Under the pieces are notes generated by a model. The model was given only the letters and a program-made list of their open reading frames with translations, made no database searches and had not been told where the DNA came from. A stretch of 64,000 nucleotides of DNA from Phallusia mammillata (Eukaryota): NCBI GenBank assembly GCA_965637545.1, contig OZ281498.1:13640001-13704000 (forward strand). Direction: 5' to 3'. A program made the position numbers and the translations under genes. Numbering within the stretch: position 1 is the first letter of the stretch; each line of letters begins with the position of its first letter. This document shows, piece after piece, positions 17,001-25,292 of this stretch.

Positions 17001-20000
17001 AAACGTTAGGATCCTTACGCTTAATCCAATGCTTTGTTGCACCCGGCAAATTAATAAGCTGTATACTGGTAATTGACATAATCATCAGTATTACGTGACT
17101 TTCGACTTTCCATGCGCTAGGCGATGACGTCAATAGCCGACCATAAATTTTACGTTCAAACATGGGCGTTTCTACAGTTCACTGTCAAGCCATTGTTTGC
17201 CGCTAATTTTGTTGACTTACAATCAACGGTTTTCGCTCCCAACTTACCCATTCTGTTTGCTACATTCCCTTGTGGCTCAGACTTAGTCATTAGTTAATTT
17301 TTAACCTGATATGTGAGTTTTGAGTAGGGTTCTACCACCTTTTAATGCGCTCATTATATGTGTTTCGTTAATTGCAAAAATTAAAATTTATGAGCGATAT
17401 ATAAAAGTTGGCTGCACGCAGTCGACCATGTTTTTTTTACAACAACCAAAAAAACTATAAATATTTTTCTTGGAGTTTTTGACCAAAAAGGTTAGTTTTT
17501 GGTACTTCTTTTGGTCTGTAAAAGTATCTGTTGTTTAAAATGATAAAAAATGTGTGCGCAGTTGTTTGTATGAAGCGGTATAAAACTAATTCGTAACATG
17601 TGATTTTTTATTTGCGAAGCAATATCGCATTTTAACCGCCACTGATATATTGCGCAGACAATATAATTACATCAGAAATACAATTTGCATCCCACGCTTG
17701 CTTAAAATCTTTGAAGTCGCTCCTAAAACAGCGGAGAAGTGATTTATCGAAGCTTCATGATTTCGCTGCTGTTGACATATGGTGCATATAAATACGTCAG
17801 ACCGTATCGCACTTAGCTGCCAACAAACGCATTTTCCATGCGCTGGAAAACCGCAGGCTTTATGTTCCATTATATAGGCCTCAGCCAACCAGCTCATACG
17901 CTTTGCTGTGTGCAGCTGCTCAACACCAACAGCGGGATACGAAATTAATTTGCTCCAGTTTCTTTCGTTTGTACTGATCTGCGCCTAACCGACATTTTGT
18001 TGATTTTGCTGTCGGAGAAATATGTGTGTGTTTGTGTGACAAAACATCATGTTTTTACGCACCATCCGAAATCCTAACCCACTCCTTGTGTCCGCTCGCT
18101 AACCTGCCTTGCTTAACGACTTTCACCCCTCAGCCCTAATTTGACCCCGTGTTTATTGATGTGCGCAGCAACTTACCGGCGGCAACGCTCAGCAAATGGT
18201 CAGCAGCCTGCATACGAATCCGTTGTATAGCCCTAACGTCGCTGCATCCGCTGGCACAGCTGCTTACAGTGTGTTGCCTTCAGGTATTGTGTTTATCATC
18301 TGCTGCAAACAGCTACACTTAATTTTGTTTGTTGTGCTTTAAACGGTAAATGTGTAAAAAATACTCTGATAAAGGTGCTAAATTTACACGTTCCTTTGTA
18401 AACGTTTCATGAGTTTCAGTAGTTTAGAAATTCCCCCGTTTTAAAGGCATATTTTGCACGTTCATCCAATAAGTTGTATTGCTTTATAATTGTTTTTTCC
18501 GACACTGATGCGTCGAAACTGTCTTCATCCAACTATAAAAACATTATTTACCAGACTTGGCGTCCATCAACCAGCATTACATGACGTATTATCCCATCGC
18601 AGCATCACCTGGCCACCAGTTGGCCCTCGCGCAGCACCCTGTATCGCCTCAAGTGGCCGCTATGATTCCAGCCTCTGGAGCTTTACGTGCTGACAAACTT
18701 GAGGTAAGAAACAGCGGAGTAATATTTGAGATTAGGTGATCTTATGTCTTGTTCATTGATAATAAAATTAAACACATTTATATACGGGTCAATCTTTGAA
18801 ATATACTATTTGCCAAAACAACAAATTATTTCCAGTTGTGGTAACTGTGTTTATGGCCTTAGAACTAAGATTTGCCCTAAATTTCTGATGGGGGTGAAGG
18901 GTGTATTGCTGTCTTTATTTGAGTTTTCGTTATGGTGGAAATGAGTCGAACGTGATAATAACCTTAGCGCATGACTCAACCAAAACAATTCAGTTTGAAT
19001 CCATCAGCTTGACAGTGCAAAGCGTGATTGGGTTTCCTGTTGTCTACCACTCTGTGAAGTACTCTCCCTAGTCGGTTAGTTTTGGCCGCGGCGATTTCGG
19101 GCGCAAACCCAACCTCAAGGTGATTTGCTTTCGCCAGCCGCCGCATTCCTAAACACCATGATGTTTTCGCTTCACCTCCCGTCGCCTTTTAAAGCGTCTC
19201 TAGTTTCCAGTTCCTCGGTAGTTTCTCGTTAAGGGCGGTGGTGGGTTTAGACCCGGTCTGTTGCGCTTACCTCGACTAACGTGCCAACATCGGTCATCAC
19301 GCTGCACGCCCTAATGCTTGTGACAAGCGAGATTCTTGCCCCGAGTTGGCGGCAACACCTGAACTATCTCACCCCGTCACGGCAAGTTTCCGTTGTACAG
19401 GCGACACCCAACTTGTTCCATTTTCGACGCACGTTTATCAATAAAAACTGTGCGCAATTTTTATTGATTTCACAGCGCTTACCGCCTCATTTTAATATTA
19501 CCTCAAAACATAACTTTTATTTTCAACGCAGGAGGTACGTAATCTTGGGGAACGCTTGTACACTGAAAAACACCATAGATTGCAGTTTTAGCAAAGTATA
19601 TCGCATGATATTTAAATACAACTGCTAATAAAAAAATACAATCAATCTAATTGACAAATAAGCCTTGTCCATATATTGCGTTGAGATCTATTGTCCTATA
19701 ATTCACAGACAAATGTGATGAGGTTGCTATCAGTTCTTATTCGTAGTTTAAAAAGTTAGGGGATGTAGTGTGTAATAAGTAGGACATTGAATTTTTTGCC
19801 CCACTTGATATTGTCGTGTATTTAATGCATCAAACAATTGCTTGCTTAAAAAGACAATGTTTATTATTTCTCAGGTTTGTCGCGACTTCCAGCGTGGTAA
19901 CTGCACTCGTGGCGAATTTGAGTGTCGCTACTGCCACCCACCGGACAGATCGATGATTGACGTCACAGACAATACAGTGACGGTTTGTATGGATTACATA

Positions 20001-23000
20001 AAGGGGCGTTGTACCAGAGAGAAGTGCAAGTACTTTCACCCACCAGCTCACTTACAGGTTTGTAGTGTAAAATCGTTTTGAAAAATGCGTTTGTTTTGGT
20101 TTGAAAAATAACCGGTTGTGGCACGTTTTCATGTTTGTTGAAACTGCTTTTAGCCAAAACACATAAAACGCTTTTGTTTGACTGTATTCTCACGAAAATT
20201 TTGCACCGAAAGGCAGTTGGTTTATTGGCACAATGTTGCCAAACAAAGGCAAATAAGAAAAAAACGGTAAACAGTATTACAGTCTTGATTTAATCGGTCA
20301 TGCATTTACGATTTGCCTTGATCCAGTTGTTTCATATTCTCAATACCTTTTCAGGCGCTAATTTCAAATATCTTTATCATCACTTTTGTATGTAATTTTT
20401 GCGACAATTTTAACACGGTGGACGTAAAATCATGTTTAGCGATCACCTACGATTTTTCTCAAAATCAACAATGAACTCGTAAGGTTAAGTTGTAAATCTG
20501 CAATCAATTTAACAATTACTTATATCACCTGGATTAATCAGTACACCCCTTGATTGGCCGACCAGTCGATTTATTCCTGCTCTAATTACTTGCAGGCCAA
20601 AATCCGGGCAGCACAGAATCCGGCAGCAGCGTTTCTGCCACCGCTTTCACACGGCACTCTCGCTACTTCTGCTCAACCCGCTGTCATGGTAGGTTTCGCC
20701 CACCCTGCCACACCTGCCACCATTACTGCACAATTGTATATTGCATGTTCTGTATCATGATATCGAAAAATGAGTCGTGTGAACTATTAATTTGAAGTTT
20801 TTGCATTCTACTACATTACTAACATAGACGTGTAAATCATTTAGTCTTTGCTTGAACATGTAAAATGTCATAATTTATACACCTGTAATTTGGTGAATGT
20901 CTAAGCAACGGTGGTAGGAGAATTTTTAACATGCATGGTGTTTTTAAAGTTGTGGGTTTGTGGCATGGTGTCCAGGTTGACATGAAGAAATAAGCTATGT
21001 CCAAATCGCCGTTTATTTAATTGTCCAATGATGTTTTTCAATTCCATGAAGTTTGAGAATCGGTATCAAAAACCATTTCTTTACTACCATGCCCAGTAAC
21101 GAGTGTTTGGTTAAAACGAACACATTAGATGTCACCTTGCATTTTTTGTAATTTCTTAACATGAAATTAGTTTCTGTTGGTTGCATTGCTTGAATGAATG
21201 GTGTTTTGCTTTCCAGCCTATACACGCTTTACTAGCTTCCCACCCTAGTGCAAGATTGTGTGAGCAATCGTAACCTGAACCCTATCTGTAATCTATTTTT
21301 GTGAAGTTTTATGTTTAGTTTTTCTGGCGATTAATTGCGATTTTTTGTGTTATTTCCCTTTCCCCTCTGTTTTGCCCCAATTCTTTGTACTTTCTCTTGC
21401 TCCCTTTGACCCTACACCCAACCCTGCTTGCTGATTGCCTGCCCCGCTATGCGATCCCCATCCGCAATGACCACAGGCCCCAAAAAGAGTTTTAACCTTG
21501 GAAGACGTGGTAATCTTCTTTTTTTCATCGAATAAAACGTTTTTTATTAATTAATAAACATATTGTTATAGGTCATAGACAAAATGTTAGTTATCGCCAT
21601 ATATATTAGGGCTTTTCTTTCGGCTTGATTTTTTGCTCGATTTCCCCCCATTTGCATGGCTCCTCGTACTTGTTCCTCTAACAATGCATGGCCAAATACT
21701 ATTCGGATGAATGATTTCATCACATCACGTGGTGATCGTGGTAGCATGCTCAGACATTAGAAAGTGACTAACTGCCCCGCGTCGCTGCCTGGTGGTTTAG
21801 CGAAATCTAAATATTGTGTATTGTCGATTGATCGTTGTTGGGAGGGTTGGTTCGTAAAACAAATGAAGTTTTCGGATGACCGGTAGGACGGGGCTTTGTA
21901 CAAGTCATCCACCCACCTTGTACCTTTTTTCCGAAATATCCCATTCCCGCTTGCAGATGACCAATGGATCAGCTCTGGGTCAGCCTCCGTTGAAGAGACA
22001 TGCGCTCGAGTCATCCATTATCACTTCGTCGGCATCGGGACTTGGCTCATCTCCTGGTTTGGCTCCGTCTCCGAGCGGTTCACAGAGTGCCGCAACTCTT
22101 GCCGCGCTTTACAGCTACAATAACGCTGCCTTGCAGGGTCTTGTCACTCTTCCACATCAAACCCTGCCCGCTGCGAACCCGACTGCATATTACCAACAGG
22201 GTACGTATATATTTGCTAAATAGCGTATAAATTTATGTATGTCAGTCTATGGGGCGTATATTTCATAACTAACTGTTTAAGCTAAATATGGGTCCCCTTC
22301 CGTGAAGGGGGCACATATTGTTTTTGTCCGTATTTCTTTTTTCTGTCCAACCCTGGTTTGTAACGCTCGTTTGGTCAAGAAAGAGTGCTTCAAATTTGGA
22401 CAGATGTTAGTTATTAATCGGAATTTGATCCTCCTGAAGTTTAACCCCGATTGACCCAGCGGTTCACCCACAGGCCCCCAAAACATATTTTTTTAAACAC
22501 TGGATTGTAACGCTCGTTTGGTCCAGAAAGAGTGCTATAAATTTACACAAATGTTAGCAATTGATCCAAATTTAATCCTCCTGAAGTTTGACTCCAAATG
22601 ACCCAGTGGTTCACCCACAGCCTCCCAAAACGTAAATTTTTAAATCGGCTTTACTGAGTAAAGTACATAATCTAGGGGTTTCATGCTGTGTTGGTTGGGG
22701 CAGTGTAAGGTATTCTAAAGAATTTTCCAACTTTTTATTGGATTCACCCCTAAAACCCCAAAATGATCGGTTTTAGTTTTAGGCCAGAAATACAAGCCCT
22801 AGTGTGCTGAAATGTTTAACATTGGGTTACTCGTTTGTTATTTAAAATATCAGCCAAATCTATCAAGTGGTTATCCGTAGGTCTACACCCCCAAATTTGT
22901 GTTAAAACGTTCACTAAATCTTCTGATGGAGTTTAACACTATATCACTCTGGTCCCAGTGGAGTTATTCACTGATTTGCGGGTAATACGCACAGCGATAG

Positions 23001-25292
23001 CTTCGCTTTTGTTTCGCCCCATGTTTACAATGGAGATAGTGATTACGCTGACGGAAACGAAACCGTGAAATTGCGGAATTTTTTTTGTGTGTTTTGCGCT
23101 TTGTTTTCACCCGATAAAGATTTTGTCGTTTATAACCTGCGATGGGATACGGTGTAGTCGATTGATACATTTTATACACAAGCTTGCTTGAGTAGTTGAT
23201 ATGCAATGGCAAAAAATAGCAAAAAGTGCAGATTTTCTTAGAATCTAAGCATAACCGGAACATTTGTTTACCGTTTGTGGGGACCCATTCGTTTTTGCTT
23301 GCACAAACAATCATATGTGTAGATCAAATTATGTGTATAGTAAATTGGTAAATATGATATACGTAAAATATATATTATGGAAGTATATTAGAAAGCCACT
23401 TTCTAGTTTTTTTCATAGCTTGCAATAAAGTTTTCGACAAAAAAAAGAAAAATTGTGACAGTGGGAATTACAGAGTGTAGTTGTGCCATACCACTACAAT
23501 CAGTTTTCTAATTTGCTAAGTTCGATTTTTAGCTGCCGGCGTTCCCATGCTTCAGCTTTATGGCAATACAGGAGGAACACTTGGTCCAGGAAGTGCAGCA
23601 GCCGCCGCGCAAAGCGCCCAGCTCGCCGCTTTTAACCTTCCTTCCACAAGTGCAAGCACCCCCAGCGCCTCCGCAACTTCTTATGCTTTCCTTAATGGAC
23701 AGAGCAGCCAGGTATATTAATTTTTATTTTTAATTAAAATAATGGTTTCTGTACTGTGTTTGTGTTGTTTTTTGTGGTTGTGTCTTGTTTTATCAATGCT
23801 TGTTTGTTTTTTTCGTTGTTGAATTAAATCATGTTTCTTGTTTGTACATGTTACTCAAACAGTGCAGTTTGTACAATCCGAAACATTTAAAACATTGTTT
23901 CTTTTCACCTTCAATGATAATATCTGCGCCCAACTTGACGTTTTTTCGTATGATAGACATGGTTTGTTTTTCTCTCCGTCTCGTTGAAATATCGTCATGT
24001 ATAAGGGATTGCAGTCTAAATCGTAAAAGCTGCACTGTTTGCTGTATTCTTGATTCCAACTTTTGCTTGCCGGCACTTGACCGACTAACCCAACACTCAC
24101 GCTTCAACGCTTTCCATGTTTTGCCCGCATCCGTATAGTTTTGCTCCGAATTCTCGGTGAAAACAGCCTCGTCGTCCCAGCAACCATCTCAACAACAGCA
24201 ACAACACCAGACTTCCAGTGGCCTCACCACGATGACTGTTTGCAGAGATTTTCAATCGGGGAAATGCGTGCGGCCGTACTGCCGCTTCGTGCATGTGCGG
24301 GAAGGTACAGCTGCCATCGAATGCAAGCGGCCAACTGTGTGCGACATAAACCACCGGCGGCATTGGCACATACAGTGTTTTCTAATTGCGCATTTCTTAA
24401 TTAGGCGAGTGGTTGTGGTGTGACGTACGCGTGTTGTGCGCATGATCAGCGCAATAAGCAATCTCAGCAGTGGCGTATGTTTTTTGACAATTCATGGTGC
24501 AGAATTGTCCACCAGGTGGCTACTATTTAACATAAAGCATCAAAAATCATAAAGCAAACATACCCTGCTGGTCTGTTTATGTATGTTATTGTGAAATTCA
24601 TGCACTCATAATTTGCGTCTGTCATTGCGATCATCTGTGTTAAAACATTTACTACATTCTATCATTGCAGGTTTTACTATCGTTCTTCAGTAATTCGTGT
24701 GCTCTTTGTAATTCTATGCACGGCGCGAATGCGAATTGCGTTTGCGAGCAATGTTTGAAATTGGTGATTTTAAAAAAACAATCACAAAACTTTCCTCCAC
24801 AGGTTGAAATACGACAACGCACATTTTGCTCCACATTTTTTATAGCGCTGATTTTTGGCTGAAACAAAGCCATTGACATACGAAACTGCCGATTGTTAAT
24901 TGTTTCCACGTTTTTCAGATTATGTTGAAATAAAAGACGACAAAGTAACGGTGTGCCGCAACGCTTTGCAAGGTGAGTTATATTGACAAAATGTTTTTCC
25001 TGTGAAACTATTACTTTGTATACAGCTGTGTTAAACGTGTAATATTCAATTATGCCCCGCAGGTCGCTGTGCACGACTCCAATGCAAGTTTTATCACTTG
25101 CCAGGCTCACCTTCTTCCCCGTCTGACGGTTCACTTCTCGACGCTCAACCCTTAGCTGCATTTGCCCCGCTTGACACCAGCGCGTCATCTATCAACGGTC
25201 TCGGGCATCCCGGTCTGATGCTTTCTGGTGGAATTCTTCCAACGATTCAACACTCCTATCCTTCAACACTCACCGACGCTCAAGGCGTCTGA
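2080..25292 (+). CDS. MBNL: Muscleblind-like RNA-binding protein with six CCCH zinc fingers (spliced; ~590 aa from ATG 2080)
   Basis: Exons 2080-2127, 2977-3102, 16569-16745, 18169-18283, 18555-18703, 19875-20057, 20596-20688, [21477-21509], 21957-22200, 23533-23711, 24139-24304, 24919-24972, 25063-25292; all GT-AG with matching phases. Translation: [16 protein letters not shown]|[42 protein letters not shown]|[13 protein letters not shown]... and RADKLE|[61 protein letters not shown]|AKIRAAQ. These are the MBNL ZF1/2 and ZF3/4 tandems; PLKRHALE resembles the MBNL NLS. Confidence 0.95.
21319..21476 (+). promoter_or_regulatory. AG-free ~157-nt zone with distant branchpoint candidate and YGCY cluster upstream of the MBNL micro-exon
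   Basis: No AG between 21319 and 21474; TTAAT at 21331-21335; long pyrimidine tract; tgct/tgct/tgcc/tgcc/cgct at ~21425-21448. Confidence 0.65.
21477..21509 (+). CDS. MBNL: 33-nt in-frame MBNL cassette micro-exon ([11 protein letters not shown])
   Basis: ccacag|GCC CCA AAA AGA GTT TTA ACC TTG GAA GAC GTG|gtaatc; phase 0/0; sits between the ...QPAVM exon and the PLKRHALE exon, the position of vertebrate MBNL1 NLS-containing alternative exon 5. Confidence 0.65.
22285..23408 (-). mobile_element. Second copy of the same modular element, inverted, in an MBNL intron
   Basis: ATGGGTCCCC 22288-22297 / GGGGACCCAT 23279-23288; hairpin CCCCTTC-CGT-GAAGGGG 22294-22310 next to the shared ggacaaaaacaatatgtg motif (reverse); ~147-bp tandem units (anchors 22364, 22511) followed by degraded copies; ctagtt end at 23403-23408. 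Confidence 0.7.
24139..25292 (+). CDS. MBNL: MBNL exons encoding a third tandem CCCH pair (ZF5/ZF6) and C-terminal tail
   Basis: 24139-24304, 24919-24972, 25063-25292 give [23 protein letters not shown]|[18 protein letters not shown]|[14 protein letters not shown]...AQGV*; both fingers are C-x7-C-x4-C-x3-H. Confidence 0.85.

What the first reader, a model, noticed from the sequence alone, without database searches (positions are those of the whole stretch)
21319..21509. MBNL1 exon-5-like NLS micro-exon with distant branchpoint and YGCY cluster: conserved autoregulation
Seen: a 33-nt in-frame exon containing KR, preceded by a ~157-nt AG-free zone, a TTAAT branchpoint candidate ~142 nt upstream of the 3' splice site and five YGCY motifs. 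Known: vertebrate MBNL1 exon 5 lies at the same position, supplies half of a bipartite NLS with the downstream KRxxLE motif, and is repressed by MBNL through an AG-free intron end with a distant branchpoint. Inference: the whole nuclear-localisation feedback loop may predate vertebrates.
Basis: partly seen in the sequence, partly recalled or inferred. Interest (0 to 1): 0.75.

Follow-up and report, generated by a model that had tools for sequence, protein, structure and literature searches.

The report
Sea-squirt muscleblind nuclear-signal micro-exon
A real 33-base coding micro-exon in the muscleblind gene of the sea squirt Phallusia mammillata matches the self-regulated nuclear-localisation exon of vertebrate MBNL1, but that this switch predates vertebrates was already published in 2023, so this is a further example rather than a discovery.

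Summary
Window 21477-21509 is a 33-nt, phase-0 exon ([11 protein letters not shown]). A 156-nt AG-free, 72% pyrimidine tract with seven YGCY motifs lies upstream of it. RNA-derived contigs from two studies splice it exactly at 20688|21477 and 21509|21957. The public Phallusia mammillata muscleblind protein (CAB3263669.1) contains it.

It sits where vertebrate MBNL1 exon 5 sits, and its KR lies 19 residues from the downstream KRHALE, as in vertebrates, lamprey, hagfish and amphioxus. RefSeq isoforms of Ciona, Styela and Clavelina exist with and without the equivalent 11-13-residue cassette. Amphioxus and anthozoans also have such a cassette.

In all six invertebrate loci examined, four sea squirts and two related corals, the cassette's acceptor has a very long AG-free zone (127-364 nt). 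In the five genes with mapped acceptors it is the longest; 39 other acceptors have median 43, maximum 126. Three sea squirts share a unique GCUUGCUG(A/U)UUG(G/C) block there.

Not shown: skipping in Phallusia (no skip junction in four runs), the branchpoint, MBNL dependence and NLS activity.

The main inference is not new. Verbeeren et al. 2023 demonstrated this autoregulated KR exon in C. elegans and reported it across bilaterian phyla. New here are the conserved intron architecture and its reach into corals.

The parts
19875..20057 (+). Exon encoding zinc fingers 3 and 4 of the muscleblind gene
   Evidence: CCCH motifs found. Contig junction 20057|20596 in all four runs. Exon mapping of P0006.
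20596..20688 (+). Linker exon ([31 protein letters not shown]); its donor is ATG|gtaggt
   Evidence: Sequence; junctions; mapping.
21319..21474 (+). AG-free, 72% pyrimidine tract at the end of the intron. It is the putative MBNL response element and an AG exclusion zone that implies distal branching.
   Evidence: P(no AG | composition)=0.033. It is the longest AG exclusion zone of the eight acceptors mapped in the gene. It is not structured: z=+1.1.
21331..21335 (+). TTAAT, the distal branchpoint candidate (A at 21334, 142 nt from the acceptor G)
   Evidence: Motif scan only; not mapped experimentally.
21431..21435 (+). CTGAT, a proximal branchpoint candidate at -42 and the rival to the distal site
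   Evidence: Motif scan.
21373..21448 (+). Cluster of seven YGCY motifs (three TGCT, three TGCC, one CGCT)
21423..21437 (+). CCTGCTTGCTGATTG, an intronic block conserved with Ciona (same offset, -55 to -41) and Clavelina. It contains overlapping UGCU and GCUU MBNL-type motifs.
   Evidence: Alignment A1. CTGCTTGCTG occurs once in the 64-kb window. GCTTGCTGWTTGS occurs once in each of the Ciona and Clavelina loci, inside their AG-free zones.
21477..21509 (+). 33-nt cassette micro-exon [11 protein letters not shown]; the KR codons are at 21483-21488
   Evidence: Junctions 20688|21477 and 21509|21957 in runs X1 and X5. In X3 the 20688-to-21957 joint carries 33 extra letters. An unbroken 1872-nt contig in X5 runs through it. 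It is present in P0006, CAB3263669.1.
21957..22200 (+). Downstream exon [18 protein letters not shown]...; the second KR motif (KRHALE) is at 21993-22010
   Evidence: KR-to-KR spacing of 19 residues.

Best explanation
This is the Phallusia mammillata (ascidian) orthologue of the KR cassette exon of muscleblind genes: vertebrate MBNL1 exon 5 and C. elegans mbl-1 exon 7. When included, its 11 residues place a KR pair 19 residues upstream of the conserved KRHALE motif. That completes a bipartite nuclear localisation signal and yields a more nuclear isoform.

The intron end upstream is a long, unstructured, pyrimidine-rich AG exclusion zone. It carries a UGCU/YGCY cluster that includes an ascidian-conserved GCUUGCUG(A/U)UUG block about 50 nt from the acceptor.

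The most likely mechanism is as follows. Branching occurs far upstream, so the whole tract lies between branchpoint and acceptor. Muscleblind protein binds the YGCY cluster and blocks 3' splice-site recognition. Rising nuclear muscleblind would therefore lower inclusion of its own NLS exon, giving negative feedback on localisation.

Shown: the exon, its splicing into mRNA, its orthology, alternative use in three other ascidians, and conservation of the intron architecture. Inferred: NLS activity, distal branching, repression by muscleblind, and alternative use in Phallusia itself.
For: Exon and splicing:
- Exact GT..AG junctions on both sides of the exon in RNA-derived contigs of two studies, and an unbroken contig through four exons.
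- The public Phallusia protein contains the cassette.

Orthology:
- Same position and phase. KR-to-KR spacing is 19 residues in Phallusia, Ciona, Clavelina, amphioxus, lamprey, hagfish and a vertebrate MBNL1 representative.
- Annotated isoforms exist with and without the cassette in Ciona (603 vs 592 aa), Styela (588 vs 575) and Clavelina (621 vs 609), and in amphioxus, lamprey, corals and Exaiptasia.

Intron architecture:
- The AG exclusion zone before the cassette is 156, 135, 364, 147 and 127 nt in Phallusia, Ciona, Styela, Clavelina and Stylophora. It is the longest in each gene, against a median of 43 and maximum of 126 for 39 other acceptors.
- Absence of AG is unlikely given composition (P from 0.0004 to 0.033).
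- YGCY counts are at or above the 99th percentile of their locus in Phallusia, Clavelina and Stylophora.
- The conserved GCUUGCUG block is unique in each locus.
- The tract is unstructured, as reported for the vertebrate response element.

Precedent for the mechanism:
- Vertebrate MBNL1 (PMC7901844).
- C. elegans mbl-1 (PMC10773944).
Against: - No skip junction (20688|21957 without the 33 letters) was reported in any of four Phallusia runs, and one run assembles straight through the exon. The exon may be constitutive, or nearly so, in the tissues sampled. Contigs also drop minor variants.
- YGCY enrichment is modest against shuffles of the zone's own composition (P=0.064), and is not significant in Ciona or Styela (three motifs in 130 nt).
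- Proximal branchpoint candidates exist: CTGAT at -42 in Phallusia and a consensus CTAAC at -24 in Ciona.
- The acceptor is CAG, not the weak AAG of vertebrates.
- Pyrimidine tracts of this kind also bind PTB-type proteins.
- No binding, localisation or perturbation data exist for any tunicate.
Confidence: 0.6

Rival explanations
1. In Phallusia the exon is constitutive, an ordinary small coding exon. The upstream tract is only an extended polypyrimidine tract that helps define a micro-exon, with no isoform switch.
For: Only inclusion junctions were seen in four RNA contig sets, and the X5 contig is continuous through the exon. The only public Phallusia protein has the cassette. Contig breaks at the exon borders can be explained by co-assembled unspliced pre-mRNA contigs (records 3, 4, 14, 15, 16).
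Against: Three other ascidians from three orders have annotated skip isoforms. An unidentified ascidian close to Phallusia has a skip-form transcript, P0167. The AG exclusion zone and the UGCU block are conserved well beyond what a constitutive acceptor needs. Contigs cannot show that a minor isoform is absent.
Confidence: 0.2
2. The exon is alternative but is controlled by other factors that bind the tract, such as PTB-type proteins on UCUU/CUCU runs, CELF or Rbfox, rather than by muscleblind itself. In that case there is no autoregulation.
For: The tract is rich in CU/UCU runs (for example ctttctcttgctccctttg). YGCY counts in Ciona and Styela are not above background. The YGCY excess in Phallusia largely reflects composition (P=0.064).
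Against: The only intronic block conserved among Phallusia, Ciona and Clavelina is made of UGCU/GCUU motifs. The coral tract has nine YGCY motifs, the maximum of its locus, and all nine are retained in Pocillopora. Self-repression of the orthologous exon is demonstrated in vertebrates and in C. elegans.
Confidence: 0.17
3. The arrangement is a chance coincidence: a short open frame with KR behind a pyrimidine-rich stretch, with no biological meaning.
For: AG-free stretches of 155 and 149 nt occur elsewhere in the window.
Against: Exact splice junctions in RNA contigs, an annotated protein, and conservation of the exon, the KR spacing and the intron architecture across phyla.
Confidence: 0.01

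Closest known systems
Vertebrate MBNL1/MBNL2 exon 5 (54 nt, TQSAVKSLKRPLEATFDL): the autoregulated NLS exon (Gates et al. 2011; PMC7901844; Kino et al. 2015)
   Same: - Position after the ZnF4 linker and before the KRxxLE exon, in phase 0.
- KR with 19-residue spacing to the second KR.
- Long AG-free intron end with YGCY motifs, and an unstructured tract.
- A distal branchpoint candidate at -142, against the mapped -141 in vertebrates.
   Different: - 33 nt against 54 nt.
- CAG rather than AAG acceptor.
- No ultraconserved element: only a 13-15-nt block is shared among ascidians.
- Regulation, branchpoint and NLS function are untested.
- Skipping has not yet been seen in Phallusia.
C. elegans mbl-1 exon 7 (Verbeeren, Teixeira & Garcia 2023, PLoS Genet, PMC10773944)
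   Same: A KR-bearing alternative exon next to the exon with the second KR. That paper shows that inclusion gives nuclear protein and that MBL-1 represses inclusion. It also states that the KR repeat with alternative splicing occurs in nearly all bilaterian phyla.
   Different: The nematode exon encodes 75 residues. The paper does not mention tunicates, cnidarians, AG-free zones or branchpoints. It lists Ambulacraria as lacking the KR repeat.
KR cassettes of other ascidians in RefSeq: Ciona APKR(I/L)LALEDM, Clavelina TAQKRVLAIEDV, Styela GQGVKRPALALDM
   Same: Direct orthologues of 11-13 residues, with the same flanking exons, AG-free zones of 135-364 nt and UGCU pairs upstream.
   Different: In those species both inclusion and skip isoforms are annotated. 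For Phallusia only the inclusion form is on record.
Drosophila Muscleblind KRPAAE nuclear localisation motif (Fernandez-Costa & Artero 2010, cited in PMC5786016 and PMC13044900)
   Same: It is the second half of the signal, and KRHALE at 21993-22010 is its counterpart.
   Different: That work concerns the constitutive downstream motif, not the cassette exon.

Membership tests
MBNL exon-5-type KR cassette (autoregulated NLS exon) | Lies between the exon after zinc finger 4 and the exon carrying KRxxLE, in frame | tested here: met
   20596-20688 | 21477-21509 | 21957-22200, all in phase 0. The order is the same in vertebrate, lamprey, amphioxus and ascidian proteins.
MBNL exon-5-type KR cassette (autoregulated NLS exon) | Carries a KR pair at bipartite-NLS distance from the downstream KR | tested here: met
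   19 residues between the KR pairs in Phallusia, the same as in the vertebrate representative, lamprey, hagfish, amphioxus, Ciona and Clavelina.
MBNL exon-5-type KR cassette (autoregulated NLS exon) | Is spliced into mature mRNA | tested here: met
   junctions in X1 and X5, 33 inserted letters in X3, and an unbroken contig in X5. P0006 contains the cassette.
MBNL exon-5-type KR cassette (autoregulated NLS exon) | Is alternatively skipped | tested here: inconclusive
   No skip junction in four Phallusia contig sets, but contigs cannot show absence. Skip isoforms are annotated in Ciona, Styela and Clavelina.
MBNL exon-5-type KR cassette (autoregulated NLS exon) | Long AG-free intron end | tested here: met
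   156 nt, the longest in the window and in the gene. P(no AG | composition)=0.033. Zones of 127-364 nt in the five other invertebrate loci examined and 1695 nt in lamprey.
MBNL exon-5-type KR cassette (autoregulated NLS exon) | Far-distal branchpoint (about -141) actually used | not testable with these tools
   Only motif candidates can be listed: TTAAT at -142, TTGAC at -67 and CTGAT at -42. Lariat reads are needed.
MBNL exon-5-type KR cassette (autoregulated NLS exon) | Cluster of YGCY motifs between branchpoint and acceptor | tested here: met
   Seven motifs in 80 nt, reached by the top 0.06% of gene windows. Caveat: P=0.064 against shuffles of the same composition.
MBNL exon-5-type KR cassette (autoregulated NLS exon) | Weak AAG acceptor | tested here: not met
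   The acceptor is CAG. The last 20 nt before it are purine-interrupted (ccgcaatgaccacag). Lamprey has AAG.
MBNL exon-5-type KR cassette (autoregulated NLS exon) | Inclusion repressed by muscleblind protein, and the cassette required for nuclear retention | not testable with these tools
   Experiments are needed. Precedents exist in vertebrates and C. elegans.
Vertebrate ultraconserved element spanning MBNL exon 5 | About 200 nt of near-identical sequence across exon and flanking introns between distant species | tested here: not met
   Phallusia, Ciona and Styela align poorly outside the exon and one 15-nt block. A comparable footprint exists only between two corals of the same family.

The most novel reading that the evidence does not exclude
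The cis-regulatory architecture of the muscleblind self-repression switch may predate the cnidarian-bilaterian split, not just the KR protein motif. That architecture is a small KR cassette directly preceded by an AG exclusion zone of 125 nt or more that carries a YGCY cluster.

Anthozoans have an alternative 15-residue cassette at the same position: LEGSRKRPHDTLTEL in corals and LDGSRKRAHEPISEL in Exaiptasia. In Stylophora it follows a 127-nt AG-free tract with nine YGCY motifs, the maximum of the locus. That tract is 96-98% identical to Pocillopora, against roughly 66% (by eye; range 0.32-0.98) for the rest of the intron, which is constraint of the ultraconserved-element kind.

The published account (Verbeeren et al. 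2023) stops at Bilateria and does not consider the intron.
Probability: 0.45. Interest if true: 0.6.

Novelty: new member of a known kind. Interest (0 to 1): 0.38.

Why it matters
MBNL exon 5 inclusion is a hallmark mis-splicing event of myotonic dystrophy, and it controls how much of this splicing factor is nuclear.

Showing that a tunicate has the same cassette with the same 19-residue KR spacing and the same unusual intron end adds a compact, tractable chordate system. Ciona and Phallusia embryos can be electroporated, which suits dissection of the distal-branchpoint and YGCY mechanism.

The wider comparison made here suggests that the intron architecture itself is conserved from corals to vertebrates. 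If so, the repression mechanism, and not only the protein motif, is constrained.

The general evolutionary claim is already in the literature, so the value here is incremental.

Tried and rejected
- One search used the wrong frame for the ZnF3/4 exon. It was corrected.
- The look-up of encoding contigs had no record for Glandiceps P0003, Exaiptasia P0206, Acanthaster P0019, Montipora P0371 and Actinia P0375. The Branchiostoma floridae gene was too long to return DNA. As a result no hemichordate, echinoderm, amphioxus, sea-anemone or protostome intron could be examined, and the only cnidarian loci are two corals of one family.
- I looked for a skip junction in Phallusia and found none. Contig depths around the exon can be accounted for by inclusion plus unspliced contigs, so I do not read them as evidence of skipping.
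- I considered that the AG-free zone merely reflects pyrimidine richness. This is rejected in part, because absence of AG remains unlikely after shuffling the composition in all five species.
- I considered a regulatory RNA hairpin in the tract and rejected it (z=+1.1).
- Oddo et al. 2016 (Ciona MBL, PMC5041496) and the planarian MBNL paper (PMC4978528) say nothing about this exon.
- No human DNA was fetched, compared or searched. The vertebrate reference locus was lamprey.
Full report
**1. What is at the coordinates**

The window carries a muscleblind (MBNL) gene on the + strand.
- CCCH zinc-finger exons lie near 2980, 16569 and 19875-20057.
- A linker exon lies at 20596-20688 and an exon encoding [18 protein letters not shown] lies at 21957-22200.

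Between the last two sits 21477-21509. It is 33 nt, in phase 0, and encodes [11 protein letters not shown], with a CAG|G acceptor and a GTG|gtaatc donor.
- The nearest upstream AG is at 21317-21318, which leaves an AG-free tract of 156 nt (21319-21474).
- The tract is 72% pyrimidine and is the longest AG-free stretch on this strand of the window. Stretches of 155 and 149 nt occur elsewhere.
Seven within 80 nt is the maximum for the 27-kb gene region and is reached by 0.06% of windows. Against shuffles of the tract's own composition the excess is weak (P=0.064).
- TTAAT lies at 21331-21335, which puts a candidate branch A 142 nt from the acceptor. CTGAT at -42 and TTGAC at -67 are also candidates.
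- The tract is no more structured than shuffled sequence (z=+1.1).

**2. Is the exon expressed?**

Yes. I laid Logan contigs of four runs from three studies on 19850-23750.
- GT..AG joints at 20688|21477 and 21509|21957 appear in X1 and X5.
- X3 has a 20688-to-21957 joint with 33 extra letters between the two sides.
- In X5 a single 1872-nt contig runs from the ZnF3/4 exon through the linker exon, 33 further letters and the KRHALE exon into the next exon.
- No joint that skips the 33 letters was listed in any run.
- Contig breaks at the exon borders in X1, X3 and X11 coincide with co-assembled unspliced contigs, so they do not indicate a skip isoform.
- These are contigs, which show presence and not absence. 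The runs are labelled RNA only by guess, but the spliced joints show that they contain RNA.

**3. Organism and annotation**

A profile-free search with the ZnF3/4 exon returned P0006. This is Phallusia mammillata muscleblind-like protein 1 (CAB3263669.1, 484 aa). Over the region printed it reads exactly as the window's exons, including [11 protein letters not shown], and all but a few of its 484 residues map exactly onto the window. The exon is therefore already in a public protein.

**4. Orthology**

In RefSeq isoforms of other ascidians the same position carries a cassette that is present in some isoforms and absent in others.

| Species | Cassette | Isoform with / without |
|---|---|---|
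| Ciona | APKRILALEDM | 603 / 592 aa |
| Styela | GQGVKRPALALDM | 588 / 575 aa |
| Clavelina | TAQKRVLAIEDV | 621 / 609 aa |

- A Ciona cDNA protein (NP_001071913) lacks the cassette.
- Amphioxus has an alternative TPDKVQSLKRLRDPSDDLL cassette.
- Lamprey has an alternative APTAVKSLKRPYNAAFDL, and hagfish a related one.
- A vertebrate MBNL1 representative has TQSAVKSLKRPLEATFDL.
- Spacing from the cassette KR to the downstream KR is 19 residues in Phallusia, Ciona, Clavelina, amphioxus, lamprey, hagfish and the vertebrate representative. It is 21 in Styela.

Position, phase, motif and spacing together make orthology with MBNL1 exon 5 secure.

**5. The intron architecture is conserved**

I fetched the genomic loci of Ciona (L001), Styela (L002), Clavelina (L005), the corals Stylophora (L003) and Pocillopora (L006), and a lamprey paralogue (L004).

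| Species | AG-free zone before cassette (nt) |
|---|---|
| Phallusia | 156 |
| Ciona | 135 |
| Styela | 364 |
| Clavelina | 147 |
| Stylophora | 127 |
| Pocillopora | 127 |
| Lamprey (AAG acceptor) | 1695 |

- I mapped each protein onto its locus for five invertebrate genes. The 39 other acceptors have AG-free zones with a median of 43 nt and a maximum of 126 nt. The cassette acceptor has the longest zone in every one of these genes.
- Absence of AG remains improbable after shuffling each tract's composition (P=0.033, 0.025, 0.0004, 0.017 and 0.009). It is therefore more than pyrimidine richness and argues for a true AG exclusion zone, which implies at least some distal branching.
- YGCY counts are at or above the 99th percentile of their locus in Phallusia (7), Clavelina (6) and Stylophora (9, the locus maximum). 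They are not above background in Ciona or Styela (3 each in 130 nt).
- Phallusia and Ciona share CCUGCUUGCUG(A/U)UUG at the same offset, -55 to -41.
- The pattern GCTTGCTGWTTGS occurs exactly once in the Ciona locus and once in the Clavelina locus, each time inside the tract. CTGCTTGCTG occurs once in the 64-kb window.
- This block consists of overlapping UGCU and GCUU motifs, the motifs reported for MBNL binding (PMC5041496).

**6. Corals**

Anthozoan isoforms with and without a 15-residue KR cassette are annotated. Corals carry LEGSRKRPHDTLTEL and Exaiptasia carries LDGSRKRAHEPISEL, in each case followed by FKKQTALE or LRKQ.

Between Stylophora and Pocillopora the 150 nt upstream of the cassette are 96-98% identical, as is the exon. 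The rest of the two flanking introns is far less conserved (0.32-0.98 per 50-column window, roughly 66% by eye). The 127-nt AG-free length and all nine YGCY motifs are retained. The two corals belong to one family, so this is a single lineage. It is nevertheless a clear footprint of constraint.

**7. Mechanism**

The vertebrate precedent is as follows. The 54-nt exon 5 supplies part of the NLS. Its intron has a far-distal branchpoint at -141, an AAG acceptor and a 90-nt YGCY-bearing element whose deletion abolishes repression by MBNL1 (PMC7901844; PMC13044900).

In C. elegans, inclusion of the KR exon 7 gives nuclear protein, and loss of MBL-1 raises inclusion (PMC10773944).

By homology, and from the anatomy above, the most likely reading for Phallusia is the same negative feedback on localisation. 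The steps not shown here are skipping in Phallusia, branchpoint position, muscleblind binding and NLS activity.

Three observations count against a strict copy of the vertebrate arrangement:
- The acceptor is CAG.
- Proximal branchpoint candidates exist (CTGAT at -42 here, a consensus CTAAC at -24 in Ciona).
- The tract is also rich in CU runs that could bind PTB-type proteins.

**8. Novelty**

Verbeeren, Teixeira and Garcia (2023) state that KR motifs on adjacent exons, the first of them alternatively spliced, occur in virtually all bilaterian phyla except Ambulacraria. They call this a remarkably early origin.

That paper does not mention tunicates, cnidarians, branchpoints or AG-free zones. 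I found no paper describing the ascidian exon.

The window's feature is therefore a new member of a known kind, and it is already present in a public protein record.
- the conserved AG exclusion zone;
- the ascidian GCUUGCUG block;
- the 19-residue KR spacing across chordates;
- the coral cassette with its constrained YGCY tract.

**9. Limits**

- Several loci could not be fetched: hemichordate, echinoderm, amphioxus, sea anemone and Montipora.
- No human DNA was used. Lamprey served as the vertebrate locus.

Noticed in passing
window 24139-25292: Three further exons encode a third CCCH zinc-finger pair ([19 protein letters not shown] ... [19 protein letters not shown]). Many invertebrate, lamprey and hagfish homologues in the search also showed three matched stretches. 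An earlier finding of this scan (s1-380848) already covers this.
   Followed up: partly
window 22208-22860 and 23256-23386: Intronic repeats have very high summed contig depth in all four runs (hundreds to thousands, against about 10-25 for the exons), with many variant letters and rearranged joints. Two similar units lie at about 22340-22480 and 22500-22640. This looks like an abundant, transcribed interspersed repeat of the SINE or MITE type.
   Followed up: no
L001 18324-18356 (Ciona, GCA_018327825.2): The 33-nt cassette is intact in this newer Ciona assembly (APKRLLALEDM, one residue different from the older RefSeq APKRILALEDM). The isoforms X1-X3 annotated on this assembly all lack it, so the exon appears to have been dropped from the newer annotation.
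   Followed up: partly
L004 19448-21142 (Lethenteron): The lamprey equivalent of exon 5 has an AAG acceptor, as in mammals, and a 1695-nt AG-free stretch upstream, much of it low-complexity CA- and CT-rich sequence. The next acceptor downstream has a 574-nt AG-free zone.
   Followed up: no
amphioxus proteins P0212, P0213, P0215, P0226 (no locus): Amphioxus isoforms carry a second small alternative segment, SPLGTLDM, immediately before the KR cassette. It is present or absent independently of the cassette.
   Followed up: no
echinoderm and hemichordate proteins P0003, P0019, P0216, P0223, P0236: Ambulacrarian muscleblind proteins do contain a first KR segment (for example ISKKRAREPADDIIL, SLKRQRDPADDILL), followed by a KK rather than a KR motif. 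All isoforms seen here include it. The 2023 paper lists Ambulacraria as lacking the KR repeat. A sponge (Sycon) protein has ARKRPSSTPADVL at the same place.
   Followed up: no
window 21610-21742: A second long AG-free stretch (133 nt) lies in the intron just downstream of the micro-exon. Its meaning is unknown.
   Followed up: no
window 28000-64000: Collagen-type Gly-X-Y coding exons lie on both strands downstream of the muscleblind gene. Earlier findings of this scan annotate these as collagen IV genes.
   Followed up: no
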